The notes below the pieces were generated by a model. It saw only the letters and a program-made list of their open reading frames with translations, had not been told where the DNA came from and made no database searches. The translations under genes were made by a program, and so were the position numbers. A DNA stretch of 64,000 nucleotides from Bispira polyomma (lineage: Eukaryota): assembly GCA_965649765.1 (NCBI GenBank), contig OZ287758.1:19034001-19098000 (forward strand), in the 5' to 3' direction. Below are positions 4,281 to 54,316 of the stretch, piece after piece; position 1 is the stretch's first letter; every line of letters begins with the position of its first letter.

Positions 4281-5964
4281 CTGAACCAGTGGTATCACAG
4301 ATAGAAGACACGCAAAATGCACACATACATTGTCCTATAGAATTGCACAGAGCAGTGAAACAAAGGGGTGAACCCAATTATGTAGGAGCATGTATTCCTG
4401 TCAGTTCTCAGTTAAATATAGATCAGTGGGAAATTATGTTGGATGGGTACTGGGATAGGCAATTGATACAACTCATACAATTTGGTTTTCCCTTGGGGTT
4501 TAATCGGCGGTGTGCATTGCGTAGTGACATTGAAAATCAGAAAACAGCCACAGAATACTCAAAAGATGTGGATGTGTATATTGAGGAGGAAATTAAACAT
4601 GGAGCCGTAATTGGTCCATTTGAAAAAAACCCGATTAATAATTGCCATTCCTCTCCTTTCATGACTTGTCATAAAGCCGATTTGGATAATAGGAGAGTGA
4701 TAATTGACCTCAGTTAGCCAAAAGGCCAATCTGTTAATGCGGGAGTCGACAAAAATAGTTATATGGGGGCCGAATTTAATCTAAGTTTCCCAACTATAGA
4801 CGATTTGACTAATGAACTTACAAAATTGGGCAAGAGAGCTCATATATACAAATTGGACGTCAGTCGGGCGTTCCGACTTTTGAAAATTGACCCAATAGAT
4901 TATGACTTGCTTGGCCTAAATTGGAAGGGTTGTTATATTGACACTTGTCTGCCGTTCGGGAGTAGGCATGGAAGCCAATTTTTTCAAAGGGTTAGCGACG
5001 CAGTGTGTCACGTCATGCGTCACCACGGCCATAGAGTCATCAATTATCAATATATAGACGACTTTCTTGGTTACGGTACCCCCAAAGGGGCAAAAGAATC
5101 ATTTGATTGTCTATATGAAATTATGGAAAAATTGGGTCTTACAATCAGTAAAAAGAAAACTGTAACTCCTTGTACTAAAGCAGTATGTCTTGGAATATTG
5201 GTGGATATCATTGATGGTAGAGTATCCATACAGGGTGAAAAACTTGAGCAGATTAAACAAACAGTCAAGGAGTGGCAAACAAAAACATATTGCACTAAAA
5301 GGCAATTGCAATCTTTGTTGGATCAATTGTTATATGTCCATAAGTGCGTCAAACCAGCTAGGGTGTTTCTCAACCAAATGTTGGAGGTACTTAGGGGCAT
5401 TACAATAGCAATAGAGTTATACTGAGTGAAGAGTTCAAGAGGGACCTCAGGTTTTTCCAAAAATTCTTACCATTGTACAATGGAGTCTCAATGTATGGCC
5501 ACAAGATGATCGATCATACTTTGGAGTTGGATGCCTGTTTGATTGGGGGCAGATGGAGAAATAAAGTATATCATCTACCAATACCTCTAAATTTTAAAAG
5601 CTTCACGATAGTACATCTTGAAATGGTGAACATTGTTGTTGCATTAAAACTGTATAAAAACCATTGGAAGGGTACTAAAGTACTTGTTAAGTGTACCAAT
5701 CAGGCAGTGGTAAATGTGTTAAAATTTGGTAAGGCTAAGGACCCATTCTTGGCAGCCTGTGCTAGGAATATATGGCAGATTGCTGCTAGGGCTGATATTG
5801 ACCTGCAGTACGTGCACATATTAGGAAAAGAAAACAGAGTAGCAGACTTGCTATCAAGATGGACCAATTCTGTACAAAATATATGGGAATTAAACTCGTT
5901 GGTAGACAGCCCATTATGGCCCAGTACAAGTATTGAACTAACTGATATTGATGTAGAAATTTAA
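4277..5964 (+). pseudogene. YR element 1 reverse transcriptase-RNase H, disrupted
   Basis: RRVIIDLS*PKGQSVN, KLDVSRAFR, LPFG, YIDD; RNase H LDAC..HLEMVN..N.VADLLSRW. Stop at 4715 and a frameshift near 5400. Confidence 0.9.
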
Positions 5965-5975
5965 ATTATAACAAA

Positions 5976-6980
5976 ATGGTACTAGATACTATGCTTTGTG
6001 TTCTAGATGTGATGGCACTCAGAGGGTTGAAGCAAAAAGCCAGCCGTGGGACTCATACAGCCTTCAGACCTAAAACAAGAAAGTGCTACACTATGTTATT
6101 TAGAACATTTGTTGGCTTTTGTATATGTGTGAAAGTAGCATTGAATAAATTAACAGTAGATTGTATCATCTCATATCAAGAGTATCTTGTGAGTAATGGG
6201 GTGTCGTCCCACATGATTAACAATCATGTTTCAGCAGTTAAGGCAATGTGCATACTGTACGATTTGCACTTTCAATTATTGGAGCACCCAAAAATCAGGT
6301 ATTTCATAAAAGCTGTCAAAATAAATAGGCCCATGACTGTCACCAAGAGAAACATAATGGATGTTGACACTCTTACAAAATTGATTGAGAAGTGCCAGGA
6401 AACAAATAATTCCCATGTGTTCAAGGCAATCTTTTTGACAGGTTTTTTTGGTTTTCTCCGGGTATCAAACATTGCTCCGCATGCAATTGGTGAATTTGAT
6501 CACACGCGTCACTTTACTGGGGCTGATGTCTCCTTTCAAAAAACCACTGTTCAACTACTTCTGAAATGGTCTAAAACTATACAAACCAGGGACAAAGTTA
6601 AGGTTTTAACTTTTCCACGGCTGGGTAAAATTTGCCTGTACAAGGCTTTAAAAAGCTTATTTGACTTATATGCCCCGGAAAAGAACGCACCATTATTTCA
6701 ATATCACACTGCAACGAGTTGCCAAGTAGTTACAGACTCCAGGGTTAGAAAAATTTTGGCTAATCTTAATCAAAAGATGGGATTTCCTCCCAATTATTTC
6801 ACCTTTCACTCTTTCCGACATTCAGGTGCCTCCCTGACCTATAATGCCCATGTCCCAATTCAAGAAATTAAGGAACATGGCACCTGGACGTCGGACTGCG
6901 TTTGGACATACATACAAACAGATAACACAAAAGGATCGGATATGGCAACTACTTTCCAGAAGATATTGGCTATTGTATGA
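5976..6980 (+). CDS. Tyrosine recombinase of YR element 1
   Basis: Open 334-aa frame with FLR, KWSKT, HSFR, HGTW and WTY, i.e. the catalytic R-K-H-R-H/W-Y pattern. Confidence 0.9.
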   Translation: MVLDTMLCVLDVMALRGLKQKASRGTHTAFRPKTRKCYTMLFRTFVGFCICVKVALNKLTVDCIISYQEYLVSNGVSSHMINNHVSAVKAMCILYDLHFQLLEHPKIRYFIKAVKINRPMTVTKRNIMDVDTLTKLIEKCQETNNSHVFKAIFLTGFFGFLRVSNIAPHAIGEFDHTRHFTGADVSFQKTTVQLLLKWSKTIQTRDKVKVLTFPRLGKICLYKALKSLFDLYAPEKNAPLFQYHTATSCQVVTDSRVRKILANLNQKMGFPPNYFTFHSFRHSGASLTYNAHVPIQEIKEHGTWTSDCVWTYIQTDNTKGSDMATTFQKILAIV

Positions 6981-7961
6981 TGGGCACTACTCCTACTGTT
7001 GGGTTTGAGGGTCTGTAAATCATGCATATATTAAAAACAAGCCAAGGTCATTTTAACTGTAAACTGACCCTCAATTTAGGGTCACCCCAATTTTGAAAAC
7101 TCACTGTCTTCAAATATGTACCCGAAGCTAAGGTGACCTCAGCTTAAGGTTGTGAATATTATACTTAAAGTCGAATGTGTTAACCTTAACTTAAGGTTAA
7201 AAATGTTTAATTATGTACTTGAAGTGAATTGTGTAAACTCAACAGAGATGTACATACATATGGTAGTTAGGATATACATTATTAGAGAATTTCGTATATA
7301 TATAATAAAATCATATACCCTCACTCAGTGTTCTCATTCAGATTGATTGTGTTAGGCACTGTTCGAAAATGTCTGTTATCTCGAAAACGGTGCTAGATAG
7401 AGCGATTATGAGCTCATTTTCGACCCGCAGGGTTAATTTTCATTACATCTAAACTTTTTGAGTAATTTTTGTTTTTGGTGGCCGTCTTAAATTTCTGCAA
7501 ATTTCTTTCTTTTTTAAAAATGTCTGTTATCTCGGAAACGGTGCCAGATAGAGCGATTTCAAGCTTATTTTCGACCCACAGGGTTGATTTTGCTTGAATG
7601 TAAACTTTTAAAGTAATTTCGATTTCAGCGGCCATCTTGAATTTCTGTGTCTTTTTCAAAAACATCTGTTATCTTGGAAACGGTGCTAGAAAGGGCGATT
7701 TCGAGCTCATTTTCAACCCACAGGGTTAATTGTGCTTATTTGTAAATTTTTGAAGTAATTTTTGATTTTGCCAGCCATTTTGAATTTCTGTATCTTTTTT
7801 GAAAACATCCGTTATCTCAAAAACGGTGCTAGATAGAGCGATTTAGAGTTTATAATTGCTGCTTTTACGTCAACAATTTCAAACCTTGTACACTCAACAA
7901 CTTCATTATTATTTCAACTTCAGGGACGCTTCATTTTTGTTATCAAAAACCGTTTTCTCAT

Positions 7962-35079: not shown

Positions 35080-38020
35080 AAAATTAGTCAATGGAATATT
35101 AATGGTTGGACAAAAGCAAACAGTGTTTTAAGGGAGACAGTAATATGTAACCTTAATTCTGACGTCTTCTGTTTATCAGAGACCCACTTAGGAGGAGCAG
35201 ATACAATTAGTGTACCAGGATATCTGTGGATTGGGAATAACAGGTCATCTATGTATACTCGTGCACCAAAGCCTTCAGGAGGAGTCGGAATACTACTTAA
35301 AGAACAATTACTGTGTCACTACAGTATTCAGGTATTAGATAAACAATATGATGGAATATTAGTGATTGAAATTAAGAATAAGTTTACTGAATTTTCTTGT
35401 GTGATATTTTCTTGCTATTTGTCCCCACAAAACTCTGTTTGGGGTAGAGAAGTATCTAATTATTTTGTTAATGTCTTGTCACTAATTTATACATGCTCAT
35501 TTGCTGACTGTATCATTCTATGTGGTGACTTTAATTCTCGATTAGGAAAACAGGTTGATTTTATTCCAGATGTGGATCATTTAAATGAAAGAGTTATTTT
35601 AGATGAAGTAAAAAACTCGCATGGTACTTCAATTTTAGAACTATTGAAAGAAGGCAAACTGTGTGTTTTAAATGGCTGTATAAGTCCAGAAAAAGATAAC
35701 TATACCTTTATTTCACTCAGAGGTAAATCAGTAGTGTATTATTTTATACTCCCACATGATTGTTTGCAATTTTGTTCTGATTTTTTTTGTCACAACTGTG
35801 AATGAAGTTCTAGATCAGTTTAATCTATATGTATATGTCTCTGACAAATGTAAAGCTCCTGACCATTCTATACTCAGTGGTCAATTCAATTTGTCATATG
35901 TGCATTTTGTTGATGGTAAGAATGATGTCAGTAATTCAAAATATGCAGATGTAAAAAATAGTAATAGTAAAAAATGTTATAAATTTGTTGATGTACCACA
36001 AAGTTTTATGAACACAGAGTTATGGAAAAAACCCACCATACTGCGTTTAATAGAAAACATTGAAGAAACAAACTCTTTACAAAAGGGTTTTGGATAAATG
36101 GAAAAATAATTTCTATAACTTATATAACAACACAGAAGATTCACCTCATGATACGCAGTTTTACAATCAGGTTATTCATCAGAAAAAAATTCTAGAAAAA
36201 AGTGGCTATTTTGATTTTGAAATTCCCAATGACCCATTAAACAAACCATTCTCTTATGATGAGATAGAAAAGGTCCTAAATAAACTTAAGGTTAAGAAAT
36301 CAGTTGGATGGGATGGTTTACCAAATGAAGTGTTAAAAGAAAAATCGGTGTCATTGTTACTGCTAAAATATCTTCAGAAATGCTTTAACACAGGATTAGT
36401 GCCGACACAGTGGTTAAAATCTGTGATTTGTCCCATTCCCAAAAATGCTAAAAAGGACCCATATGTGCAGTTACATTGCCGTGGTATCAGTTTGTTATGT
36501 TGTATGTCTAAAGTTTATTCATCTCTGATTAACAACGGAATAACTACATACTTATCAATGTCAGACCTATTGGTAGATGAGCAAAATGGATTCAGGCAAG
36601 GTCGTTCATGTGAAGAACATATTTTTACCCTCTCAAGTTTAATTCAAAACCAATTTTCATCATCAAAGCCAATATTTGCATCTTTTATTGATTTGGAAAA
36701 GGCTTTTGATTGGGTTGATAGAGATTTACTTATGTACAAGATACTTTGTTATGGAATTAATGGAAAAATTTATAATGCAATTATGTCACTCTATAATAAT
36801 ACATTATCTAGTGTAAGAATAAATAACCTAATGACAGATTGGTTTCCTGTATCTTCTGGGGTAAAACAAGGAGATACCCTTTCACCTACTTTGTTTGCTA
36901 TTTATATAAATGATCTTGCTAAGTTATTAAAGGAAACTAACATTGGCATAGATGTAAATGGTTATAAAGTATGCATTCTGTTATACGCAGATGATTTAGT
37001 TTTACTTGCTGAAGATGAGAAAGATTTACAAACTTTACTAAATATTACATATCATTGGTGTTGTCAATGGAAATTAAATATTAATATCGATAAATCTAAT
37101 GTTATCCAATTTAGGAAACCAAGGAAGAAAAAGTCAGATTTTCAATTTTATTATGGCAATATATGTCTGACATATGTTAAGGAGTACAAATACCTAGGAG
37201 TATATTTTGATGAGCATTTAACCTTCAAACACTGCATTAATGCATTATCAGATGCTGGAAGTAGGACACTGGGTGCATTGCTATCTAAACTAAAAACGTT
37301 AAAGGATGTAAGGTATAAAACCTATACATCTCTATTTAATTCCCAAATATGCTCAATACTGGACTATGGCTCTTCTGTTTGGGGTCATAAAACAGCTAAA
37401 GAATGTGATGATGTTCAAAATAAGGCAATAAGGCATTTTTTAGGTGTACATAAATTCACGTCTCATGTTGCAATAAATGGGGAAATGGGGTGGTATCCAA
37501 GTAGGTATAGACGATATGTATCTATGTTTAGACTTTGGAATAGACTTATAAAAACAAATAAAGACAGGTTGTTAAAAAAGATCTTTCTCTGGGATAACAA
37601 TAACTGTAAATCAAATTGGTCGGCAAATATGAAAAATTTATTTAATGTTCTAAATATGGCACAAGCATATACGTCTAAAGTCTTGGTCAACTTGAATGAT
37701 GTCAAACGCCTTGTTCAATTTTGTACGGGCGTTCTACCTTTAAGAATAGAAACAGGGAGATACAATTTGACTAAAGATGTAAATACTGGAAAGTTTTGAA
37801 AGCTATTCCCTGAAGAACGATTATGTCTTGTTTGTAACAGTAATGTAATTGAGGATGAAATACATTTTCTTTGTAACTGCCCTGCCTATAGCAAACCAAG
37901 AAATATTCTATATAATGTTATACAGAAAAGTGTTCCTTCTTTTTTAACTATTCCTGATACTGAAAAGTTTGAAACTATTGTAAAACACTTTGACAAGGCC
38001 CTAGCGAACTACCTTTAAAC
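35080..38020 (+). pseudogene. LINE ORF2 (APE + RT), frameshifted with internal deletions
   Basis: WNINGW, SETHL, SGGVG, GDFNSR, PDHS; RT DEQNGFR, FIDLEKAFD, GVKQGD, LLYADD, YKYLG. Confidence 0.9.
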
Positions 38021-41000
38021 ATCTTGGAATATACGCAAAAAACTTTCTCCAAAAATAGTAATATGTAAATGGTAAACAAAATTTAACAGTAACTAAATTG
38101 TTTTGGTGTAAATCTCTTGTAAAAATAAAAAGTTAAATTTGGTAACCTAGTGCAAAAAAAAGAATGAAAATGTAAAATTTATGTGAAATTAATTTGTAAA
38201 ATTAAAAAGTTAAATTTAGTGCTTTAGTGCAAAACAGTGAAAGTGTGATGTTAAGGTAATTGTAGTAAAATAATGTTTACTTTGTTAATGTAATTTTTAT
38301 TAACTGCAGAATTCTGCAAATGTATTAGTCACACAACAAAAATATGTAGTAAGTTGAAGTGACATATAAGCCCATGTGGGCTGGGCAACACTATTAAAAA
38401 TCTATTGTATATGTATTAATGTATTAATGAAGTGCATGTCACTGTAATAAATAAATAAATAAATATATAGAAGACAAACAGATCACAATAAAATCAGACA
38501 ACATGATGTGCGGTCTTCACGTACCAGAGATGATTATCTCAGTTTATGTTTGAGAAACATATGGCTAATATGTGCTAAAAATTAAAGGTTATCTAAGTAT
38601 TTTAATAAAACATATACAGGATAAAATGAACATTTTAGCAGGCACCCTATCAAGACTGCAGAAACTAGAGAACCAGGCAATTAATATTAGAAACTTAATA
38701 AAAGCTAATTTTGTTTATTCTGACATTACCCTTGACATGTACATAATGGACAATTTAATTTAATTTAATTTCTGACACATAAAGACCGCTGTTATAAAGA
38801 CCAGTAAAGAGACTACAACAGACCTACAGACCAAGAACAAAGAAACACTCATTTTGATTCTTTTTTTTTGCATGATTATGCTAATAAGCATTGGCATAAT
38901 CATGCTATCCTATAGATTAAAGAGTGTAGCATAGTGGTAACCATGGTTACATGGTAAAATCTTGTAGACAGGGTAATCTCAGAACTCGCAAGGATTTCAG
39001 TTTTCATATTTGGCATACATATGAAGTCTGTTTCAGTGACGGTCCATTTTTATTTGGTGTTAATATAGCTAGAATTAAGTGAGACATAGACATTTTCTGT
39101 TTTGGGATCATGAGCTTTGATTGAATTGTCCATTACCACCCATTTCTCTCTGTGAACAGCATACCCCCTCCCCTATACAAACACCTCTCAATTCATTGTG
39201 TTCTCAGGGGGGAAGGGGTTATGTGCCTACAGCTTGTGCAGAATATGTATATAAACATACACATACACCTGTTTTGATTTTATGCTTAGGGTGTGTTGTA
39301 AACAGGTTTTACAGGCAACACGTTTTTTAATCTTTTACAAATCACTCTCAGTTGTAGTACAGTGCACGGGCCACCTTAGATAAGGGCAAAAATGATATAA
39401 GAATGATATATTAAACACAGTCGTATAGCACTTTGGGCATTTATTACATCATCTAACATCCAATGTTAATAGGTTACAACATATAACATTTACTACTAAT
39501 GTACATGAGGTGGTGAGCTTACATATTTAGGTCACCTTACATCTAGATTTTACCTCTAACAGTAAGTGAGTTAAGGTCACCATAACTTATTACAAAATGT
39601 TTTAGGTTTACTAAAACAAGTGACTTAAGGTCACCTTAACTTGAATACTTCTTTTAATCTTTAATTAAGTTTAATAAAGGTCACCATAAATTAGTGATAA
39701 GTTTTTACTAAAGTAAACATGGTGACTTTAGGCCACCTTAGTTTAAATACTGACTTTTAATTTTAAAGTGAATTTTAGATGAGCTTAACCAAGCTTTATG
39801 GTGAGGTTATCTTATTGTAACCTTTGAAATGTAAAGGTAAAGTTTTATTTTCTACTGCTACTGATGGTATAGACTATATATTATAAAATATAGTGTAAAC
39901 ATATAGTATTTACAATGCCCAAACGCCATACCAGATGTTAATGTGGTATTGTTTGTTGTAGAGATTTTGCTACAGATGCCGATGCATTAGGGGTGGACTG
40001 CAGGTATGCCCATGTCTAACCTTATATGCTGTTAGAGGCACTAATTTACCTTGAACTTTGTACATAAATACTGGCGAATCCGTTGTTTTTATTAATTCTG
40101 AACATAGTTTCAAGAGCTGCTACAGGACTTAACAGAGAACGTCCTAGCTCCAATAACTGTAGTACATGGAACTGATCGTACTTTTGTAAAGTTTTTGCCC
40201 ACCGAAGTACAACATGTATTCCCCATACAAAATCCTCACACGTCAAGTGCCTCTGAGGATTGAAATCACTAGCACTGGTTGAAACCGGGTTTAAGAGCCG
40301 AAAGAAACCGAAAAAGGCAGTTAAAATTAATGCCTTATAGACATATGCATGTGGGAATGCAGAAACATGATGAAGGACAGATGTGAGAATAGGGATGGTG
40401 ATTATCCCTTTTAATCTAGGAGCATAGGGGGTGGGAAGTGAGAGAGACTTGAAAAATAACTTTATTTGAGGGTGAGCAAAAACACTCCAATTGCTGAGAG
40501 GTAATTTCGAATGGAGGGTGGTTTTAGCCCCTGCTGAGCCATGTATTCACAAAATTGGAGGATGACTTGCAGGGATGTCGGTTCTGCTGTCCCAATGAAC
40601 ACAGCAAATGATCATGAAACCGACTGGAGTTAAGCCCTGCAACCCCAGCCCCATTATCACACCATAATTTGACAGTACAATTTTGGAAACATGTACCCCA
40701 TCCCCATAAGGCAACTAGTATATTCCACATTTCGAAGTGGACTATTACAAATGTTTTAGGTTTGTCATCCGGCAGGGCCGCAGAATACACATTATCAGCC
40801 CACATGGCTCCAATTCCCACCAGGGATGCATCAACAAATAACTCAAATACCGGTCTGTCTTTTAAATGCATTTCAACCACCACATTGAATTTTCCTAAAA
40901 ATTCATTGAACCAACTTAGGTCGGCCCTGATATCCCTGGTGAGGGTAATGTTTTTGCTGGGGTAGGTTTCCCTAAGCAGTCGTAACATTCTGTTGAGGAA

Positions 41001-42657
41001 AAGTCGCGCAGTTGCGACACACCGATGCACATACAGCAGCTTTCCCATAATTGACTCTAAGTCTCTTCTAGTACAATGAGTTTTAGAACACCATTGTTCA
41101 CATGTGGCCTTAATTTGTTCCAATTTGTCATTTGGAATTGTAAGCGTACCTTTTTGGGCATTAACTAGAATTCCCATACACACACATTCATGAGCCGGGG
41201 GAAATACTTTTTGGGGGTTTATGGGCAACCCTAAGCTTCAATTAACCGGTATAAGTGATCAAAGGAATCTTTTGCTTTTATCTTTTTTCTTTATAAATCC
41301 ATATTTGGTATTGTTTGTTTTTCATTAGATGTCTGATACTATCCGTGCCGTGTTTATACCCCTATATCATTAATACGACTGACTAACATGTCAACAGTGG
41401 GAAGGGTAAGAATGAATTCATCATAAATGCTATCTGTAACTACACTATTTACTGAGGTAGCGTCATCCCCTTTTAAAGCTTGCTGCCATGCTTCTATATT
41501 TAGTTCAGAGGGAACAGGCCTAAGTAATTAGGGCACCCCTCCCTAGTGACTGCATTATGTGCTACAATGGCCCATTGCTCTGACAAATCAAATTGCAAAG
41601 TTCTTCTTGAGTCTGGGATCCCCCCCCCCCCCCACAGCATTATAAATGCAATTGAAACCAAATGTTTCACTTGACTTTCCAGGGAACTCGTTTTTATTGT
41701 CATATGAGTGGTTTGAGGTGGTAATTTCCACCAAGCCCAAATTGCCAATTAGGGGTTCGGCCTGAAGGATTACTTTGTTTTTGACACTGCGTGAGTGACC
41801 CCTTGTGGGTGTATGACATTGATTGGAAGATTTTGGAGGGGGGGGGATCTTGTCCCCAGCTGTACAGAGGGGGAGGAGTTGCAACTACTACTATCAACTA
41901 ACTTTCATTCAACACTGTTCTAGATCTTACTGGCTGTCAGTTTTAAGCAGCCTTCTGAAAATCCTTGGAATGATTCTGAGTTTCTCCACAATGAATTTCC
42001 CTATGCAACTGTACACGCTTTCCCTGACTGTAGCACTTTGAACACGCATGTTTCAGAATCATGGTGCCAAAAACGTGGTCATCAGTCTGCCTACACATGC
42101 CCTTATTATAGGCACTGCACATGAGAATCGAACTTTTTACTTTTTTTTTTTGACCAGCACTTGCACCTTGAGGTGCCCGTTAGTAGAGGCATCCTTCAAT
42201 GTGCGTTGCATGAGGCGAGCCCTTAAGTCATGGATCTGACTTAAACTGGCCTTTCCCTTTCCCATCTCTAAGAGCACTTGACAATGGGCACTTCTTACGG
42301 TGTACCATGATGTTTCCAACCCATCTCTCATGAGCTGCATGGCATATTTTAGCATATTATCACGCATATTATTTTCTTTAAGGTTACTCCTAGCACTGAC
42401 ACAAAGTGCCGCGCATCTTCTGTAAGGCAGGGCCCTAGCTCTGGCGCTCTCAGTTCTGGGGGACCAGTCTTAGTCTTCACGCTTCAGTGCTTGCGGGCTG
42501 TATATAAGGCAGCTTCAGTCAAACGTCCCGCCATTTATAACAATAGTGTTCACAGAATAACAACTTTGGAACGGACATCTTGGAAATTCAAGTTTATGTT
42601 GCAGATTTTCTTTCTGTTTTAGTCTTTCAGTGTATTTTATCAGTTTTAAACTTTACA

Positions 42658-43683
42658 ATGCCTCCCGTGTATCATTGTTCGAGGTGTCAAGAGAAGCATG
42701 AGAGGCCGGTTGGCAATGCTTGTACTCTGGAAGCCGTGTCTGTTGAAGCCACTGCTAGCGCTGTTTCTGCTGAGGATTCATCCACTCTCCCTTCAAATTC
42801 GGGTTCAGATATTGTTTCTACTCAAATTTTACTGCAACTGCAGTCCATGGCCCAGATGATGGAGCGCATGGACCAGAGAGTTCAGCAGACAGAAGCAGCG
42901 CTGGCGGCGGACGTTCATAACAAGAATCAGGCTAGTATTGTTTCAAATTCTGTTGTTAACAGTAGTTCTGTGAGCACCGATACCAGTGAAGTTTTATCCA
43001 CTGAAACTGTAGTTCCGAATATAGAATTTTTACGGAAGAACAGTCAAATTCAAAGCCAGGTTGAATTAAGGCTGGCGGAGTTAAAACAGCTAAATGAAAA
43101 CCCACAGCAAGGTAAACTAAAGTCACAAAGGGGAGGGGGCGCTGATATATTGGTCAAGTGCGTCGTAGAATGGCCCCAAAACCACGTCTTGACGGGTAGT
43201 TGTAAATCAAGGCCCACATATGATGACTTATCAGTCAACCAATGGGTATGTGGTTTTACGCGCATCATCCAGGAAGAAAAGTCAAATGACATTAGGGAAA
43301 TTATGCTAGATTATATGGCTAATCTGATGGAAGATGCAGAGGATTTCTCTTGGGAGTCGGCAAAAGCTTGCCATGCGGTGGTGCTTACCCACATGGAAAT
43401 GGGGAAGGTTAAATGGTCAGAGGTCGAGAAGCTTGACAGATTCAGAAGGGCTCATGCCCAGAGACATATTGCTAGCAATCATTCTGGTAATAATAATCGT
43501 GGTTTGAATAAAACACAGGCCTCGGGTAAGCAGTCCACAGCGAACTGTAAGTTCTTCCAGGATGGTACGTGTAAGTTTCCCAACAGTCACAAAACCGGCA
43601 ATACCTACTTCAGGCATGGTTGCGAAACCTGTGGGGGGTCACACAAATCCACTGCATGTAGTAAGAAGAGTCTAAAAAACTGA
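42658..43683 (+). CDS. Gag-like ORF1 of YR element 2
   Basis: 341 aa from ATG 42658: N-terminal CxxC/H/C motif, WPQNH..YDDL..W..GF, FSWESAK..HA..L, C-terminal Cys/His cluster. Confidence 0.85.
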   Translation: MPPVYHCSRCQEKHERPVGNACTLEAVSVEATASAVSAEDSSTLPSNSGSDIVSTQILLQLQSMAQMMERMDQRVQQTEAALAADVHNKNQASIVSNSVVNSSSVSTDTSEVLSTETVVPNIEFLRKNSQIQSQVELRLAELKQLNENPQQGKLKSQRGGGADILVKCVVEWPQNHVLTGSCKSRPTYDDLSVNQWVCGFTRIIQEEKSNDIREIMLDYMANLMEDAEDFSWESAKACHAVVLTHMEMGKVKWSEVEKLDRFRRAHAQRHIASNHSGNNNRGLNKTQASGKQSTANCKFFQDGTCKFPNSHKTGNTYFRHGCETCGGSHKSTACSKKSLKN

Positions 43684-46193
43684 GGGGCCACTGCAATTCT
43701 GCAGTGGAAAATAGCAAAGACAAAATTTTTTCCAGAACTTTTTATAACTCAGAGTTTTGTAATTTGCAGTTATTTGATAAAGACGTAAGGGGTAAAATGC
43801 TCACTTACAATAAAGGTAAACGTGCATGCTGTTCATAAAGTGACGCATTACAAAATGTAAATAGCACAAACAAACAGGTCATTGTAAATAAAGGTAAAAG
43901 TGTCAAAATGTTCAGTGGGCGACTGGGGGATGCACGTGCAGCTGTGGATTTGACGCGAGCACACAGCCAGATACCCTCAAACGCCAATAGAACCTTGGGT
44001 GTAACACCTGTACATAAGGGTCGTGTTTACTTTGGCCCAGCCACGTGAAAAGCACAAAAGACCTGTGAGCGGGGGCAAAGTAAGCACACCAAGGAAACAA
44101 TACTTGGACGTACCAAGCCTATTATTGAATGTCTCCCGTATAAAGCACCAGTCAATAATAGTGTCCACGGAGATGCCTTGTGGCATAACAGATTTCAACC
44201 CCTATACCAAACCATTGTTGAACTCAACAATGGGGAGGTCAAGGATAGCGTGAACACAAACGAGAGTGTTAATGACAAGCCACAACAAGGTGTGAAAAAA
44301 CAAAGGCGGTTGATTAAACACAATGCTGGGAATCAGGGTAATGACAGAAATGTCAACACAAATCCAACATATCACTCAGTTGCCCCTTCAGACAAGTACG
44401 CTTTGGGGCTTAAGCAAAAACGCAAGAAAGGGGAGTTGCTAACTAAAGCCCGGACCGATGACACGTACAAGGCGTGGCATGAGCAGAATGACGTCGACTA
44501 TGGATTCATTCCACTTAACACTTTAGGAGAAAAAATTTGGGATAGGGGGGCGAAAAATCATGGCCTAAATACCTTCCAAATGCATGATAAATTAAGAGCT
44601 GATGGCAGACACAATTATAAGGGTCTCCAACTTGTGGTCGAATCGCAATTAAATGCCGACAAATGGCAAGATTACCTCGCTAAGTATTGGGACTGGCAAC
44701 TGCCCCTGCTCGTTAAGCACGGTTTCCCGTTAGACGTATGTCGAGCTAAAGTCAGTCAGTCGGACAATTGTAATCATAGTTCGGCGGAAACCTTCCCTGA
44801 ACATGTGGAGACGTATCTCAAGGAGGAGCGTAACTTTGGCGCTATATTGGGCCCCTTTAAGGACCCCCTATTAGGGACTTGCATTGTTCGCCGATGATGA
44901 CACGTGAGAAGTCCACCTCCGCTAATAGGAGAGTGATAGTCGATTTGAGTTGGCCACATGGTCAGTCGGTTAACGCAGGTGCTTCGGCTAACTCCTACCT
45001 TGACACTGATTTTATTCTATCATATCCTTCCATTGATAACATTACTATTGAAGTAACCAGATTGGGTAGAGGATGTCATATCTATAAGATTGACGTAAGT
45101 AGGGCCTTTAGGCACGTTCCCATAGACCCGGGTGACATCGATCTCCTTGGTTTAAAATGGAGAGAATTCTACGTCGATAAATGTCTGCCCTTCGGGTATC
45201 AGAATGGTAGTACCATTTTTCAGCGCCTTTCGGACGTGGTCAGATTTATAATGAAGGCGGACGGATACAAAGTTCACAACTATTTAGACGATTTTTTGAC
45301 CGTATCGTTGCCAAGTAAAATAACAGCCAGTTACGAACGTCTTCAGGCCTTGCTCAAGGAGTTTGGCCTCACGGTCAGTCAGAAGAAGTTGATTCCTCCC
45401 AGCACACGGGTAGTATGCCTAGGCATACTAATAGATACTGAAAATTATACCACCTCTATCCCGGACGAAAAAATGCAGGAAATCACGGCCAAGTGCGACA
45501 TGTGGCAAGGGAAAGAATTCTGTACTAAAAAGGAATTACAGTCGTTATTGGGCTCCCTCTTGTATGTAGCCAAATGCATTAAATATGCTAGAGTCTTTTT
45601 GAACCGCATGTTGCAATTCCTCAGAGACAATTATAGCAAAAGTCGGTTGATAGTCACTGAGGACTTCAACAGGGATTTAAATTGGTTTACAACCTTCATG
45701 AGGCATTTCAATGGCGTGTCTTTTTTCTCGCATAAGGCTACCCATGCACAGGTAGAATTAGATTTATGGTATGGGAGGCATCTGTGGCAATGACGTGTAC
45801 AAACTTAACGTACCCTCACACATGACCAGTGACAACATAGCGTCGCTTGAAATGATCAACATACTCGTTGCCCTTAAGCTATGGTCCAACGTGTGGCAAG
45901 GAAAAAAAGTTATGTTCAAATGCGACAATCAGGCAGTGGTTAGTGTCATGGAAACCGGGCGTACTCAAGATCCTGTTTTGGCTGCCTACATCAGAAACAT
46001 TTACATGTGGGCTAGCAAATTTAACATAGACATAAGAGTTATTCATATTTTGGGGGTTAAGAACAAGGTTGCAGACCTTCTCTCACGTTGGGATAAAGTG
46101 AATAATAATGAATACCTACTTGCTCAATGGGCGGGGCCGGTTAACTGGTTGCACACAGATGCCACCCTCCTAGACATTGACTACACAATTTAA
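43674..46193 (+). pseudogene. RT-RNase H ORF2 of YR element 2, with stops and frameshifts
   Basis: RRVIVDLSWPHGQSVN, KIDVSRAFR, YLDD, CDNQAVV, ADLLSRW. Breaks near 43838, 44870 and 45765 relative to element 3. Confidence 0.9.
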
Positions 46194-46230
46194 ACATGTT
46201 GTATCTTTCCTGTGGTACTATGTTTCAGGA

Positions 46231-47217
46231 ATGCAGCCGTTGGACTCCCTATTAACAAATAGAGCCTGTAAGAGACTGCATTTTGCTTTTGCTGAATCAA
46301 CAGCCAGGGCCTATGATGCCATGTTTAGACTGTTCCTGGCTTTTGGAGCTTTCATGCAATGGCCTTTATATCAGGTGACTGTATTCAGAATTTTGTCATT
46401 TTTAGAGTTTCTGACTTTTAATCACATGTCTGCTGCTCAAGTTGCAAATCATCTGTCGGCTGTTAAAGTTAAATGCATTCTTTTTCATGTAAATGTGGAT
46501 TGCTTTGCAGAGCCACGCTTATCTTATTATAGTAGGGCTCTTGCTATTAATAAGCCTTTACAAGCCAAACTTAAAACATTGTTTGATATTCCTTTGCTAA
46601 CTGCATTGGTTGCCAAATGCGACAACACATACATGGGTCAGATCTTTAAGGCTGTTTATCGGACCAGTTTTTTCAGTTTCTTGAGGCTTTCCAATTTGTG
46701 CCCACACTCTGTGGCTGGGTTCTCTCCATTGAAGCATTTGGCCAGAGGGGATGTGTTGTTTAAGCCTGGGTACATAACTCTTTTAGTGAAATGGTCTAAG
46801 ACCATGCAGGTGAACAATCAAATTAAACTGTTAAATATTCCAGTCCTGCGGAACTCATCCCTTTGTCCGGTAGCTGCGCTGAAAAATGTGCTGGCCCTTA
46901 CCCCTGTTGGCCCTAACATGCCTCTTTTTCAGTATAAGTTGGGTGGTGCTTGGGTTCCGTTGACGGATACCAGGGTTAGGCGTCACTTGAAGAATGTGCT
47001 GCAGCTCCTGGGCTGTGCTAATGCTAACCTTACTTTCCATGCGTTCCGGCGTTCAGGTGCCACATTTGCCTTTAACAATAATGTCAACATACAGGACATC
47101 CAGCGGCATGGCACTTGGACGTCGGACTGTGTCTGGAGGTACATCACGGATTCGGCCCAGACGGGGTCCCAGGTCGCTGATTGCTTCAAGGGTGCGCTTC
47201 AGCCTACTTCTAGGTAA
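46231..47217 (+). CDS. Tyrosine recombinase of YR element 2
   Basis: FLRLSN, KWSKT, HAFRRSGAT, HGTWTSD, WRY; frame is open. Confidence 0.92.
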   Translation: MQPLDSLLTNRACKRLHFAFAESTARAYDAMFRLFLAFGAFMQWPLYQVTVFRILSFLEFLTFNHMSAAQVANHLSAVKVKCILFHVNVDCFAEPRLSYYSRALAINKPLQAKLKTLFDIPLLTALVAKCDNTYMGQIFKAVYRTSFFSFLRLSNLCPHSVAGFSPLKHLARGDVLFKPGYITLLVKWSKTMQVNNQIKLLNIPVLRNSSLCPVAALKNVLALTPVGPNMPLFQYKLGGAWVPLTDTRVRRHLKNVLQLLGCANANLTFHAFRRSGATFAFNNNVNIQDIQRHGTWTSDCVWRYITDSAQTGSQVADCFKGALQPTSR

Positions 47218-48880
47218 CTCTGGTGTTTGGTGGTTTCACGTCTATAGGTCACCTGTGCAAAAAGAATATATAAATGTTATGGTATAATAAACATAAATTT
47301 GGACAGTTCACAACCCCCTTGTCCTTGGGCATAAGGTCACCTTATATCTCGGTACATTATGTACTCTTACATAATTTATCTTCCAATCACTTCGCAACCT
47401 CCATAGTATGCTTTAAATCAACCTTAAACTCAAGGTAGGGCCAACAGTTCGGGCCCATTTACTTCCATACTGACTTGAACTCAAGGTATGTTCACAATGA
47501 ACTTCAAATTTAAATCGGGCTCACTAACGGTGCCCCTTCATTGGCATACTCTTGACACATTGGTTGCTAGTCTTAAACTCAACTTAGGGCCATCGTTAGG
47601 CCCCCTCAAAATTCTTCTTGAAGGTGACCTTAAGTCTACCTTATTGTTATATAAAGAATTTAGACTGACTTTACGTTCACCTTAAACTTTCACTCACTGT
47701 AAGGTGACCTTATGCCCCTCAACTATAATCCGAAACTGTACATACTATACCTGTAGAACTAACCATGCTAGTCATTAATAAATATTTACCCGCAAGTGTT
47801 TTTCTGTGTTGCTAAAGGAATTATAAAATTATTAAGGTTTCTATTACTAACTTTCCCTTGGCCCACGGGGAACTGTACACTTTACTTTCCATTACACACA
47901 AGTTTTAAATGCTTTGTTTTGTGGCCAACCAAAAATCACTTGGGCTTCATCAGAACTAGAAAGTTATTATGGGCTGTGATGTGTGTGTATATATTGTAGG
48001 GGGTACTTTAGGATATCAATCTGAAACTATTTATATTTCACTGGGTACTTTTGGTAGTTAAATTTAAAATTTATATCAATATTTCTTTTGTTCTTTTCAA
48101 ATCGCAGAAGTGCCTCCTATAAAATGGTAGATGTGATCTCATTATTATTACAAAGTACTTTTGGGTAGATCCAATGACTTTTTCCTTTCACATGCTCTTG
48201 TTGCATAGTTCTACCTGTAGAGGGTGTAAAACAATTTTTTTTACATTAGATTAAATATAAAATACTTGCAGTATTAAATGGCCCATCAGTATATTATTTA
48301 AATTTTTAAGTTTGGGTTCTTTTCTCTGTTCCTTTGTTATCACCACGTCAATCTCTTATTAATTGTTCTCTCCAGCTCCAGTATTTGCAGGGCCAGCACA
48401 CTCTCCCACACTTATTTATTATTATTTAACCCCCAGTTTAAAAGTAAATACGTGATAAGATCATAAAAGAGAAAATCCAGTGTTGGCTCTGTATGTGTAA
48501 TTAGTTTGAAATTGTTTAATGCTGTATTTATGTAAACTTCCTATCTGGGAAATGAATGTCAGAAATGCAGGAATAAGATGCAGCAGTTAGTGTTGATAGT
48601 GTGAGGGTGGAGATTGGCAAGTGTGGAGGGTGTTGTGTGTGTGCTATAATGCATCTGTGCAAAAAATATATTAGATAGATTTATATTCTAGCACTAGGGT
48701 TTACATGTTTATTAATTCCAGCACATCCTAGATTCCTACATTAGTTACATATATCTTTTTGTAACTGTTATATATGTGGCCTGTTTTTGACAGTACATAC
48801 ATGTATAATCATTTCCGAATGAAGGTCGCTAGAGTAGAAAGATTATGTACATGTTTTCTGTGCCAATAATGTACGATATT

Positions 48881-50445: not shown

Positions 50446-53400
50446 TCCATATGACACCCTGGTTTGTCCTTACTTCTATTCTTTTTGATGGAAGGCATCG
50501 CAGGTCCAAAGATTCAGGAATTAATACTGGTTCTAGGAAAGACCCTGGTTTATCCTGTCACAGCCATTGATCCTCAGTCTCAGGAAGTCATGCTGGCCTT
50601 ACGAAAGACACTGTCTTGTCTTTACACAGTCTTTTAGATTTCTACAGCCTTAGAGTGAGGTACAGTTTGATGATTAGTCTTGAGGAGTTTTAGAAATTTT
50701 TCTACTTTTTGTCCAGCACGTGCAGTTTTCCTGTTCCTCCTATAGTTTTGCCAGAAAATCTTCCAAGAAACCTTCATTTTTCATCACAGGACATATAAAG
50801 TTTGGCAGAGGCACAGTTTTTTTATTGGGTTAGCCAGTACCTTGTGTCATTACACCTCTGGAGCATTTTCCTGCTCAAGATTAAGTCGTCGGTAAAATCT
50901 TAAATTTTTAGGCCACACATCTTGGTTCAGAGGGGCTTCTTTCCTCAATCTCTTCTTCACTGGACACTGGTTTACAATGTTGTAGATTTAGCATATGATC
51001 ATTTAACGGTCACATCTCCAATGAAGTTTGTGTTTCTTGTAGAGACGATAGCTTCAATGGAGAAGCAGATTACATTAGTAAGGTGTCACCCGCGGCTTTT
51101 CCAGTAGTATATAAGAAAAGACTAGAATTTTCTCCTGTTCTTGGATCTGAGGGTTCCAGTCGAGTATGTCTTGTCTTGTTGACTCGTCTTAAATGATAGA
51201 ACAATCCCCACAATATTTTAAAGGAATTTCCACTCCATCCAGAAGAACATTATGTCTTGTTGATCACGGATGCCCTAGAGAATGGGTGGGAAACTAGCAT
51301 AGAAACCATCAGTGTAAGTGGTCCATGGAGATCCTCAAATGCACATCATCACATAAATCTGTTGGAAGATAAAGGCTGTGTTGGTTTTGAGGTTATTATT
51401 CTTGTTTTTCTCAGACAACACCACGGTGGTGTCTGATACATTCCATGGAATTCGGTAGTTTCAATTATGGCTAACATGGAGAAGAAATACCTTTGTCAAG
51501 GCGTCACCTCAGGCCATCCCAATGGTATCTCCTATGGTTATGGAACTATCACCAGTCTCTTGATCTGGGGATTCCAGTGGATTCCACTTTCTTCTTTTAT
51601 CTGAAATGGTGTAACAATTGCTAGTATGTTTGAATGGTTCATCTCTGTACCCGAAACATGTGTTGCTCTTCACAGCTTCCTCAGAGGGGGTATAGCGAAC
51701 TCGCATGAACATTCTTAGTGTAAGTGTTCTGTAGATTCCTTCATTAACACATATTCATTTTTATTAGAAATGAAAGCTGTTTCACTAACAGAGGCTACAT
51801 GTCACAGTGCTGTCTTATCTGATCATGTTAGGTGGAAGGTGTTAGGTGGAGAGTTAGAGCATGGACAAAATCCAATGTTTTTTGTCTTCATACATGCAGG
51901 GTCGTACCCAGGTAAGTGGTGTTCAAATGTTCTGGTTGGCTCCCTATCCAGGAGGTACAAGGACATTCAGAGTGTTCACTCCACTATCACGAGTTCACTG
52001 CAATCTGCAAAGGTTGGCATAGTTCACACATACACAGATTTGCAAGCATGCTGATAAGCTTCCTCTGTGCGTTTTAGTCAAGCTTGTCACTCACAATTGC
52101 CAGATATTTTTTGGGGCTCCAGGATGGCCATGGATTCCATGGTTCAGAATTCTAATAGATCATTCACCAGGGTTCTACTACTGTTGAGTCAGCTTCAACA
52201 GTTTTCACAACAGTCTGGATTTCCTGAACATTTGTGTAGTATTTCAAGTCAGACCACAATATTCGTGTTTTTCACAATCACGTGTTTTTCCAAGCACTGA
52301 CTGTTGTCTAAGTTACAAAATCTTTTGTTTAGTTTTGTTTCACACAAGGATTGAAAAATGGCCACAAGGTAATATTTTTGAGGCTTTTGGAAAGCTTTAA
52401 CAGAGAACTATTCCGTCTGGATGGTTTTAGTTTAGGCAGACGAAGGAATGAGATTCTCATTCTTCTCTCAGTTTTAACTTTTGGTCTCAAATTACTTTTC
52501 AACCGTATTTTTGTCAAAGAATCAGTAGCCTGATACCCTTTGACCAGCCCTTTAGACATCTCTTAACAAGCTTTACTTTTGAGGATGTCTCTTTGTGTAC
52601 TGTTAGAGTTCTTATGTTTTCTCTAGGTGGAACTAATGACTTCTGGACAGTTTCTTAAATCTTTTGCTTGCTTCCATGAACAGAATCACTCAAAAGATAT
52701 TTATTATGCTTATATTTCCTTCTGAATATTTTGATCAGGAGGTGCAATAAGTCTCTCAAGATAGGGCCTATGATATGAGGGCCTATTCCTTGTTCTTTGG
52801 AGGGTTTTGTCTTTTTATCAAGTTTTGGAAGCTTGTTTCTCAAGTTTCTTGCCACTTTCTTTTATTCTGTCTTAAACTTGTTCCTCTGGAATATCAGGGC
52901 ATTTTTAAGTTGGGAACTATTGTATCTGCTCAGTCTATTGTTTACAATAGTGGCTTGTTCATGATGTCTTAGTTCCTTACGAGTTTGTAACAGAGCTGTA
53001 TATGCATCTGTTATTAGCAGTATGCTGTAGTACTGATGACAGGGTTTTAATCTCCCTGATAAGAGTACTCTAACACTTTCCTGTTGTTAGTTAGTGATGG
53101 GATTGTTGGAAGTTTCCATGTTCTTCCATCAGCCATCATATTATGTTTGGTGAGTAAATATGATGGAATTTCACATATATTTACAATGTTTAGTTTTGTG
53201 TAATGCATTATAATTCTTTATGTATTCAAATGTTCTTTGTAGTATATTTATATATGTCTTTGGCATGGGTTTTTCTTATGTACTGGATGGGTTCCAATAT
53301 CTATTTGCTCATAGGTAATGTTTTCCTATTCCTTTTCCTGGACCGGAGATGGCCTCAAAGTTGGAGGGAAACCAGTTTAGGGTTGAAGCCAGTAATGGAA

Positions 53401-53729
53401 CAGATTTAGAGTTTGTGCACATTTGGGCATTTATTCTTAAATATATATTCATTAGTACATTAGTAATATTACAACATCAAGCTACGTTATTTACAGTTTC
53501 AAGTTTACTTTAAGGTCACCTCAACCTTATCTGAGCATAAAATTTGTAAGTAGGGTGACCTTAACTTAAGTTTAAGGCGGGTGTTTTTCCTTCTTAAATG
53601 TCACCTTTATAACGTTATTTAAATAAATATAAGGTTACCTTAAGAGTAACTTGTTTTAAGGTAAACTTAAGGTTTTTATATTTATACAAAGTGTAATAAT
53701 ACTGTTAAACTATGTGTAAAACTACATAT

Positions 53730-53733
<4 letters not shown>

Positions 53734-53782
<49 letters not shown>
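53734..53782. repeat. (TA)n microsatellite
   Basis: About 24 TA units replacing the YR C-terminus of element 5. Confidence 0.95.
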
Positions 53783-54135: not shown

Positions 54136-54316
54136 TACCGGTGACCTTAATACATAAGCTCACCACCTCATGTACATTAGTAGTAAATGTTGTATGTTGT
54201 AACCTATTAACATTGGATGTTAGATGATGTAAAAAGTGCCCAAAGTGCTATACGACTGTGTTTTATGTATCATTCTCATATCACTTTTGCCCTTGTCTAA
54301 GGTGGCCCGTGCACTG
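54136..54316 (+). mobile_element. 181-bp mini-element equal to the 3' terminus of the element-4 family, inserted into the YR gene of element 5
   Basis: Closely matches the reverse complement of 39360-39536; ends GGCCCGTGCACTG. Confidence 0.85.

What the first reader, a model, noticed from the sequence alone, without database searches (positions are those of the whole stretch)
39510..39840. Regularly interspaced TTAAGGT-C-ACCTTAA palindrome array downstream of a tyrosine recombinase gene (element 4)
Seen: near-perfect 15-bp palindromes centred at 39533, 39578, 39632 (perfect), 39682 and 39734, i.e. steps of 45, 54, 50 and 52 bp, with degenerate copies at 39515, 39781 and 39803. They are separated by non-repeating AT-rich spacers. 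The whole block is bracketed by a perfect 10-bp IR, TTTGGGCATT (39432-39441, next to the poly(A) signal) / AATGCCCAAA (39914-39923, just after the YR ORF). The same motif recurs in three other divergent YR families in this window although the surrounding 3' sequence does not align. Inference: this is a conserved cis-module, possibly recombinase binding/recombination sites (integron- or shufflon-like), a Gag/RT recognition scaffold, or a repeat-spacer RNA processed into small RNAs. I know of no description of this in Ngaro/DIRS elements but cannot search.
Basis: partly seen in the sequence, partly recalled or inferred. Interest (0 to 1): 0.8.

Follow-up and report, generated by a model that had tools for sequence, protein, structure and literature searches.

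The report
Palindrome cluster in Ngaro retrotransposon tails
A 14-base mirror-symmetric DNA motif (TTAAGGTSACCTTA) is repeated 2-9 times in the non-coding tail of a whole clade of tyrosine-recombinase (Ngaro-type) retrotransposons; selection clearly keeps it, most likely as a docking site for a paired protein, but what it does is still unknown.

Summary
TTAAGGTNACCTTAA (2 mismatches or fewer) occurs 12 times in the window against 0.65 expected. Perfect copies number 2,793 in the 1.04-Gb genome against 10 for a reversed control.

The array at 39510-39840 lies on the minus strand in the tail of a degraded Ngaro-type retrotransposon (42421 to 39360). This tail is the known "B" split direct repeat: elements read A1-ORFs-B1-A2-X-B2.

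Thirteen families from two assemblies share one B layout, although their recombinases are only about 31-61% identical and their B sequences do not align:
- recombinase stop codon;
- 2-9 palindromes;
- AATAAA;
- a terminus like ..CACTG.

GGTSACC is the only strongly enriched word in B. Motif density is 68-fold higher inside B than outside.

Regular ~50-bp spacing is peculiar to this one family and partly reflects tandem duplication. The GGGCAT/ATGCCC bracket is not general. More distant recombinase elements lack the motif, so it marks one clade.

I found no support for CRISPR-like, integron-like or shufflon-like behaviour. Evidence for RNA pairing is weak.

Best reading (about 0.4): a cluster of duplex sites for a dimeric protein in a U3-like control region. 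I found no published description. Earlier scan notes on this same window agree on the closing stem of element 2.

The parts
39360..39919 (-). B split direct repeat (3' module) of element 4. Reading the minus strand, it holds the palindrome array, the poly(A) signal and the element's 3' terminus at 39360 (..GTGCACTG).
   Evidence: All genomic copies end at window 39360. About half start at 39917-39922, preceded by an unrelated X segment and the 5' A segment.
39526..39540 (.). Palindrome, 2 mismatches (centre 39533). It is the last site before the poly(A) signal on the element strand.
39571..39585 (.). Palindrome, 1 mismatch (centre 39578).
39625..39639 (.). Perfect palindrome TTAAGGTCACCTTAA (centre 39632).
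39675..39689 (.). Palindrome, 2 mismatches (centre 39682).
39727..39741 (.). Palindrome, 3 mismatches, GGCCACC variant (centre 39734).
39802..39816 (.). Decayed site. Most other copies of the family carry ATAAGGTAACCTTAC here.
39440..39445 (-). AATAAA poly(A) signal, about 80 bp before the element terminus. It overlaps the inverted-repeat arm 39432-39441.
39432..39441 (.). Distal arm (TTTGGGCATT) of the 10-bp inverted repeat.
   Evidence: I10
39914..39923 (.). Proximal arm (AATGCCCAAA) of the inverted repeat. It coincides with the start of B.
40015..40492 (-). Broken tyrosine recombinase gene of element 4, with frame breaks and a ~150-bp deletion at 40013 relative to other copies.
40524..41228 (-). 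Remnant of the RT C-terminus and RNase H region of element 4.
42366..42421 (-). 5' A segment of element 4. Its start at 42421 abuts the start of element 2.
6981..7361 (+). B module of element 1. Sites lie at about 7043, 7077, 7129 and 7176-7193. The element is inserted in a 150-bp satellite.
47228..47877 (+). B module of element 2. Sites lie at 47332-47344, 47620-47632, 47672-47684 and 47700-47712. An 18-bp perfect inverted repeat spans 47327-47344 / 47700-47717.
53360..53782 (-). B module of element 3 (3' limit approximate). Sites lie at 53511-53523, 53551-53563, 53630-53642 and 53657-53669.
54140..54316 (+). 177-bp partial B of the element 4 family. It starts at the GGTGACC core of the last palindrome and ends at the element terminus. 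It is cleanly inserted in the recombinase gene of element 3.

Best explanation
The array is a cluster of copies of one 14-bp dyad-symmetric site, TTAAGGT-S-ACCTTA. It lies in the B split direct repeat of one clade of Ngaro-type retrotransposons.

**Inferred mechanism.** The site is read as duplex DNA by a dimeric sequence-specific protein. B behaves like the U3 part of an LTR. It is transcribed as the 3' UTR just upstream of the poly(A) signal. At every B|A junction it lies directly upstream of the A segment, which carries the 5' end and, in some families, a TATA box. Such junctions occur at the internal B1-A2 join, in tandem arrays and at any circle junction. There the cluster would act as an upstream control or assembly platform, enhancer-like. 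The partner could be a host factor or a conserved element protein such as the Gag N-terminal zinc knuckle.

**Shown:**
- the motif;
- its selective retention;
- its position;
- its restriction to one clade.

**Inferred:**
- recognition as duplex DNA;
- the identity of the binding partner;
- the enhancer-like role.
For: **Sequence, not context, is conserved.**
- GGTSACC words are 12-16-fold enriched and present in 8-10 of 10 B modules. No other word compares.
- The logo is symmetric from -6 to +6.
- Motif density is 68-fold higher in B than elsewhere in 163 kb, P about 1e-76.
- The perfect 15-mer occurs 2,793 times in the genome, against 10 for the control.

**Number, spacing and orientation are free.** There are 2-9 sites per module, with steps of 27-100 bp plus extra sites at +10/11. 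This is typical of homotypic binding-site clusters.

**No strand signature.**
- Centre C and G are equally frequent.
- G.T does not exceed A.C, either within arms (25 vs 34) or between paired sites (4 vs 9).

**Position is constant**:
- after the recombinase stop;
- before AATAAA;
- 120-300 bp from the B|A junction.

The TATA box lies at +81 and +92 of A in two families.

**Derivatives keep it.** Non-coding A-X-B units keep all of B.

**The motif outlasts the proteins.** It is unchanged while recombinases fall to about 31-61% identity.
Against: - No binding data, and no RNA data for this organism.
- The 5'-most A1 has no B upstream, so an enhancer role applies only to junctions or must act at a distance.
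- TATA boxes in A are seen in only 2-3 of 8 families.
- There is a slight asymmetry: T at -7 in 33/45 sites against A at +7 in 20/45. A purely symmetric duplex reader does not predict this.
- B modules fold better than shuffles, z -3.4 and -4.1. Sites also show somewhat more nested mutual complementarity than pseudo-modules, P about 0.03-0.045. A single-strand role is therefore not excluded.
- No known transcription factor site matches. The nuclear-receptor half-site AGGTCA explains neither the equally conserved second arm nor the A/T-centred sites, which make up 19 of the first 50 perfect genomic copies (my count from the list).
Confidence: 0.4

Rival explanations
1. Single-strand structure. 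In the genomic RNA, or in the single-stranded cDNA, the self-complementary sites pair with one another within or between molecules. This would build a rod-like 3' UTR element used for RNA dimerisation, packaging, nuclear export of unspliced RNA, or reverse transcriptase recognition.
For: - The array always lies in the transcribed 3' UTR upstream of AATAAA.
- B folds better than shuffles, z -3.4 and -4.1.
- Minimum-energy folds pair sites in nested order (1 with 5, 2 with 4) with the spacers unpaired.
- Asymmetric variants come as complementary pairs, such as GGCCACC with GGTGGCC and TGAGGTCACCCTA with TAGGGTCACCTCA.
- The matching test gives P about 0.03-0.045.
- Centres are complementary in 16 of 23 nested pairs.
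- Element 2 has an 18-bp perfect closing inverted repeat.
- DIRS-1 uses single-stranded cDNA intermediates (title of PMC7192593).
Against: - If structure alone mattered, the sequence would drift, yet one sequence is kept in all families.
- There is no G.U excess on the sense strand.
- Pairs with 12 or more of 13 matches are no more frequent than in pseudo-modules.
- A palindrome with a 1-nt centre cannot form a hairpin by itself.
- In element 4 all centres are G on the element strand.
- No Rfam family matches.
- The asymmetric variant pairs may be inherited from a common ancestor of related families.
Confidence: 0.28
2. Recombinase sites. The palindromes are accessory (arm-type) or core-type sites for the element's tyrosine recombinase, possibly read through an added Gag N-terminal zinc knuckle. 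They would organise the complex that recombines the B|A junction, or be crossover sites themselves, with the 7-bp GGTSACC as the overlap region.
For: - The site is dyad-symmetric with a 7-bp core, and it lies 120-300 bp from the junction.
- The B terminus (AGG..CACTG) resembles a half-site and has an inverted copy 25-31 nt into A.
- A clean 177-bp insertion begins exactly at the GGTGACC core and ends at the element terminus.
- One genomic copy has a ~146-bp insertion in the same palindrome.
- All families share a CX2CX3HX7C motif at the Gag N-terminus.
- An earlier scan note proposes a spliced GagN-recombinase fusion (not tested here).
Against: - The arms outside the core are only about 4 bp, short for recombinase binding arms.
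- Number and spacing vary freely, unlike fixed recombination complexes.
- Only two breakpoints at palindromes were seen; other truncations are elsewhere.
- Copies show no unit reshuffling or inversion.
- Element ends and junctions do not fall at palindromes.
Confidence: 0.2
3. No function. The motif is a decaying short tandem repeat carried along by descent.
For: - Within element 4, some units show residual similarity at a 102-bp offset.
- Family L063 has a 131-bp tandem duplication.
- Within a family, sites decay no more slowly than spacers: minor-base frequency is 0.045 against 0.036.
Against: - Between families nothing but the palindrome is conserved, while flanks and spacers cannot be aligned.
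- The motif is present in all 13 families, with the same placement.
- Equal decay within a family is what is expected of dead copies.
Confidence: 0.07

Closest known systems
Ngaro retrotransposons with split direct repeats (A1-ORFs-B1A2B2)
   Same: - Gag, RT/RNase H and tyrosine recombinase ORFs, with no room for a methyltransferase domain.
- A1 = A2 and B1 = B2 at 99-100% identity.
- Internal repeats lie downstream of the recombinase.
- Solo AB-type units occur.
(PMC4157794, PMC8547959, PMC9210276)
   Different: - A non-coding 0.75-2 kb segment X separates A2 from B2.
- B is long (340-720 bp) and carries the palindrome cluster. None of the papers I could read mentions such a cluster.
Enhancer repeats and transcription-factor site clusters in the U3 region of LTR retroelements; papillomavirus E2 sites and EBV FR EBNA1 sites (from general knowledge)
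   Same: Multiple copies of a short palindrome for a dimeric protein, with flexible number and spacing, in the non-coding control region of a mobile element. The region is 3' in the RNA and upstream of the promoter after replication.
   Different: - B is not copied to the 5' end of the integrated element.
- The binding protein is unknown.
- No transcriptional data exist.
Retroviral and Ty palindromes for RNA dimerisation, and the 3' UTR constitutive transport element of type D retroviruses (from general knowledge)
   Same: Self-complementary or two-fold symmetric RNA elements in non-coding parts of retroelement genomes, which fold with nested symmetry.
   Different: Those elements are single or double rather than 2-9 copies, and they are not sequence-identical across distant families. 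Here no wobble-pair signature of RNA selection is seen.
Integron attC sites, shufflon sites, lambda attP arm sites
   Same: Short imperfect palindromes next to a tyrosine recombinase gene. attC sites act as folded single strands, and arm sites are accessory sites near the crossover point.
   Different: - No cassettes, no variable spacers and no inversions among copies.
- Element ends are not at the palindromes.
- Arm sites have fixed spacing; these do not.

Membership tests
Ngaro superfamily (order DIRS) | Encodes a tyrosine recombinase together with RT/RNase H and a Gag-like ORF. | tested here: met
   Pfam RVT_1, RVT_3 and a weak Phage_integrase hit on element 2 ORFs. tblastn maps the same order in elements 1, 4 and 5. 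Gene calls in L052-L066 agree.
Ngaro superfamily (order DIRS) | Split direct repeats A1-[ORFs]-B1-A2-B2, with the internal repeats downstream of the recombinase. | tested here: met
   A1=A2 and B1=B2 at 99-100% in L052, L053, L054, L056, L058, L064 and element 5. There is an extra X segment between A2 and B2. Elements 1, 2 and 4 in the window carry a single B only.
Ngaro superfamily (order DIRS) | No methyltransferase domain, which separates Ngaro from DIRS1/PAT. | tested here: met
   The RT, RNase H and recombinase ORFs are contiguous or overlapping (44178-47217), with no spare coding room and no such Pfam hit.
CRISPR-like repeat-spacer array | Spacers differ between copies or lineages, being acquired sequences, and repeats are identical. 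| tested here: not met
   Spacers are the same, about 90% alignable, in 28 copies of the family. Repeats are imperfect.
Shufflon / invertible segments | Segments between sites are found in both orientations or in different orders among copies. | tested here: not met
   No inverted or reordered matches inside B among 28 copies of the element 4 family and 20 of the element 2 family.
Integron attC / cassette system | Each palindromic site bounds a mobile cassette, and cassette content varies. | tested here: not met
   Unit content is fixed within a family. The only exception is one 177-bp piece bounded by a palindrome.
Integron attC / cassette system | Recombination through a folded single strand that the recombinase recognises. 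| not testable with these tools
   This needs biochemistry. The nested complementarity signal is weak.
Simple tandem repeat (satellite in 3' UTR) | Whole units, spacers included, align head to tail. | tested here: inconclusive
   Tandem Repeats Finder finds nothing over the array. Only a ~25-nt core aligns across all units, though some spacers match weakly at a 102-bp offset. L063 has a 131-bp duplication.
Nuclear-receptor response element (extended half-site TNAAGGTCA) | AGGTCA half-site required; sequence 3' of it is free. | tested here: not met
   The second arm is as conserved as the first. A/T-centred perfect sites, which lack AGGTCA on either strand, are 19 of the first 50 genomic hits (my count from the list).

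The most novel reading that the evidence does not exclude
The palindromes are recognition sites for the element's own recombination machinery, a recombinase carrying the Gag N-terminal zinc knuckle. They would be read either on duplex DNA as arm-type sites or on folded single-stranded cDNA in the manner of attC. This would be the first defined cis-acting recombination signal of a eukaryotic tyrosine-recombinase retrotransposon, and it would explain fragments that begin exactly at a palindrome core.
Probability: 0.15. Interest if true: 0.8.

Novelty: new variant of a known kind. Interest (0 to 1): 0.5.

Why it matters
How Ngaro and DIRS elements are transcribed, packaged, circularised and integrated is largely inferred from repeat geometry. 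No cis-acting protein-binding signal has been defined for them.

This motif is short, sharply defined and strongly selected. It is present in thousands of copies and in every family of a large clade. That gives a concrete handle for:
- pull-downs to find the partner protein;
- reporter assays on the B|A junction;
- better annotation of B repeats and solo A-X-B units in this lineage, where the genome holds more than 12,000 recombinase-gene candidates.

If the partner is a host factor, the motif would show many retroelement families keeping the same host regulator's site as they diverged.

Tried and rejected
**Readings tested and rejected**
- CRISPR-like spacer variability: rejected, because spacers are fixed within a family.
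- Shufflon- or integron-like reshuffling: none found.
- Known RNA family: no Rfam match at E of 1 or less over 39300-48000.
- GGGCAT/ATGCCC bracket as a general feature: seen only in elements 2 and 4, and partly in 3. Other families have only a GGGCA-type word near the start and end of B.
- Helical phasing of sites: judged by eye from the step lists, the steps show no common period.
- Nuclear-receptor site: rejected (see the membership test).
- Extra conservation of sites among copies of one family: none, as expected for dead copies.
- TATA box in A as a general feature: present in only some families.
- X segment as coding or conserved: no ORF of 80 aa or more, and no similarity between families.

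**Steps that were blocked**
- Expression or small-RNA evidence: no RNA run is on record for this organism.
- Goodwin and Poulter 2004 is not held.

The script printed a majority-rule line for the 566-nt non-coding B module while mapping columns. The stored column table was deleted.
Full report
**1. What is in the sequence**

Window 39510-39840 holds five good copies of TTAAGGT-C-ACCTTAA. They lie at 39526-39540, 39571-39585, 39625-39639 (perfect), 39675-39689 and 39727-39741, with weaker copies around them.
- With 2 mismatches or fewer, the window has 12 matches against 0.65 expected; none of 100 dinucleotide shuffles reached 12.
- In the whole 1.04-Gb assembly the perfect 15-mer occurs 2,793 times. 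The same pattern read backwards occurs 10 times.
- The 10-bp inverted repeat 39432-39441 / 39914-39923 is exact.
- Tandem Repeats Finder does not see the array.
- The repeat finder shows a 25-nt conserved unit with steps of 54, 50 and 52 bp. It also shows weak similarity of some spacers at a ~102-bp offset.

The spacers are therefore not wholly unrelated. Part of this particular array grew by tandem duplication.

**2. Context**

The window is a nest of retroelements.
- 35251-37799 (+) is an unrelated LINE, with endonuclease and RT.
- tblastn with the ORFs of the intact element 2 maps five tyrosine-recombinase elements:

| Element | Strand | Coordinates | Note |
|---|---|---|---|
| 1 | + | ORFs 3651-6980 | |
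| 4 | - | 42421 to 39360 | recombinase remnants 40492-40015 |
| 2 | + | 42421-47877 | intact |
| 3 | - | recombinase 54694-53783 | |
| 5 | + | 59446 onward | 95% identical to element 2 |

- The array of the finding is downstream of the broken recombinase gene of element 4, on the minus strand.
- All window motif hits with 2 mismatches or fewer lie in the tails of elements 2, 3 and 4. Element 1 has weaker copies at 7043-7193.

**3. The module is the B split direct repeat of Ngaro elements**

*Element 4 family.* Genomic copies of its tail all end at window 39360. About half begin at 39917-39922, inside the proximal inverted-repeat arm. Those copies are preceded by 300-560 bp of unrelated sequence, and before that by a 56-bp match to 42421-42366, the 5' end.

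*Element 2 family.* Element 5 is followed head to tail by repeated units. Each unit is A (153 bp, equal to the 5' end), then X (about 745 bp), then B (650 bp, equal to 47228-47877). Of 18 full-length 3' ends sampled, 7 carry B1-A2-X-B2 and 11 carry only B.

*A second assembly.* Relatives came from ENA assembly ERZ22147071, organism unknown to me. Their recombinases are 45-61% identical to that of element 2. They show the same structure with A1=A2 and B1=B2 at 99-100%.

This is the Ngaro architecture A1-[ORFs]-B1A2B2 described in PMC4157794, PMC8547959 and PMC9210276. The solo AB-type units reported for Cafeteria Ngaros are also seen here. The difference here is the non-coding X segment between A2 and B2, which cannot be aligned between families.

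**4. A common layout in 13 families**

The families compared are elements 1-4 and L052-L058, L063 and L064. Every B reads as follows:
- recombinase stop codon;
- 60-130 bp of sequence;
- 2-9 palindromes, with steps of 27-100 bp and often a second overlapping site 10-11 bp on;
- 60-130 bp of sequence;
- AATAAA, 58-120 bp before the end;
- a terminus of the type AGG..CACTG, AACTGT or CAATG.

Further measurements:
- An unbiased 6-mer count over ten B modules finds GGTGAC, GTGACC, GGTCAC and GTCACC enriched 12-16-fold and present in 8-10 of the ten. Nothing else compares.
- When sites are selected on the 9-mer core only, conservation runs from -7 to +6, giving TTAAGGTSACCTTA. The centre is C or G in 40 of 45 sites.
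- Over 163 kb of window and loci the motif is 68 times denser inside B than outside: 77 hits against 18, binomial P about 1e-76.
- The ~50-bp regularity is a property of the element 4 family only. The GGGCAT/ATGCCC bracket is seen only in elements 2 and 4, and partly in 3.

**5. Breadth**

Seventeen metagenome contigs encode recombinases 26-40% identical to the query alignment. In the eight with 350-2,600 bp of downstream sequence there is no GGTNACC array and no other repeated palindrome. The one exception is a GGTTACCGGTTACC doublet in L078.

In a maximum-likelihood tree the motif-bearing elements form one clade (support 91/92) and the motif-less ones fall outside it. The cluster therefore marks one Ngaro clade in this host lineage. 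This distribution cannot tell a host partner from an element-encoded partner.

**6. DNA or RNA?**

*For a single-strand role:*
- The B modules of elements 4 and 2 fold better than shuffles, z -3.4 and -4.1.
- Minimum-energy folds pair sites in nested order and leave the spacers unpaired.
- Some asymmetric variants occur as complementary pairs.
- Nested complementarity exceeds that of pseudo-modules built from other families' sites, but only at P 0.03-0.045.

*Against a single-strand role:*
- The sequence itself is conserved, not just the ability to pair.
- Near-perfect pairs are no more common than in pseudo-modules.
- G.T mismatches do not exceed A.C, either within arms (25 vs 34) or in nested pairs (4 vs 9).
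- Centre C and G are equally frequent.
- A 1-nt centre does not allow a hairpin.

The only strand asymmetry is T at -7 (33/45) against A at +7 (20/45). On balance I read the site as recognised in duplex form.

**7. Mechanism**

*Best reading (0.4).* The array is a homotypic cluster of sites for a dimeric protein in a U3-like region. B lies 3' in the transcript. At every B|A junction it lies just upstream of A, which has a TATA box at +81 or +92 in two families. Free copy number and spacing fit a site cluster better than a fixed recombination complex. The motif stays constant while element proteins diverge to about 31-61% identity. That suggests a host factor or a very conserved element domain. 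All families share a CX2CX3HX7C knuckle at the Gag N-terminus. An earlier scan note proposes that this part is spliced onto the recombinase; I did not test that.

*Rivals:*
- An RNA or cDNA structural element for dimerisation, packaging or export (0.28).
- Recombinase accessory or crossover sites (0.2). Two anecdotes favour this. A clean 177-bp insertion at 54140-54316 starts at the GGTGACC core and ends at the element terminus. One genomic copy has an insertion in the same palindrome.
- A functionless repeat (0.07).

**8. What was not possible**

- No RNA run exists for this organism.
- Text searches for the motif and for Ngaro palindromes or stem-loops found nothing relevant.
- The founding Ngaro paper is not held.
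- The script printed a majority-rule line of the non-coding B module by mistake.

**9. Verdict**

- It is a previously undescribed motif cluster inside a known repeat type, so I class it as a new variant of a known kind.
- Interest is moderate, at 0.5.

Noticed in passing
window 42366-42480: Elements 4 (minus strand) and 2 (plus strand) start at the same base, 42420/42421, head to head with no spacer. This suggests insertion at or next to an existing element end.
   Followed up: partly
window 54140-54316: A 177-bp piece of the element 4 family tail runs from the GGTGACC core of the last palindrome to the element terminus. It is cleanly inserted in the recombinase gene of element 3, in the opposite orientation.
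   Followed up: partly
L052-L064 and L051, B|A junctions; window 42366-42421 with 39360-39372: The last 6-9 nt of B (such as GGGGCACTG or GAGGCAATG) have an inverted copy 25-31 nt into A. The 5' and 3' ends of the element could therefore pair. The B terminus AGG..CACTG also resembles half of the palindrome.
   Followed up: partly
L051:7056-7799; L052:6517-7440; L053:6815-7977; L054:7609-8394; L056:7645-9623: A non-coding, family-specific segment X of 0.75-2 kb always sits between A2 and B2. The order is always ORFs first, then X. Tandem runs A-ORFs-B-(A-X-B)n occur, for example three B copies after element 5 and in L059.
   Followed up: partly
window 2871-3034 and 7362-7848: Element 1 is inserted in a ~150-bp satellite. 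There is no target duplication, and the junctions read ..TCTTTT|CGAGTG.. and ..GGCACTG|TTCGAAAA..
   Followed up: partly
window 42658-42723 (element 2 Gag N-terminus) and ORF1 of L052-L064: A conserved N-terminal motif MPxxFxCxxCxxxHxRPxxxxC (a CCHC knuckle) is present in all families, in addition to C-terminal CCCH/CCHC motifs.
   Followed up: no
L056:6318-6332: A perfect TTAAGGTCACCTTAA lies inside the recombinase coding sequence of one family. The position is taken from the hit list.
   Followed up: no
own genome: More than 12,500 first-look candidates for this recombinase, spanning 47-91% identity to element 1. This is an unusually large and diverse Ngaro population.
   Followed up: no
window 40013: The window copy of element 4 lacks about 150 bp of the recombinase C-terminal coding region that other family copies have.
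   Followed up: partly
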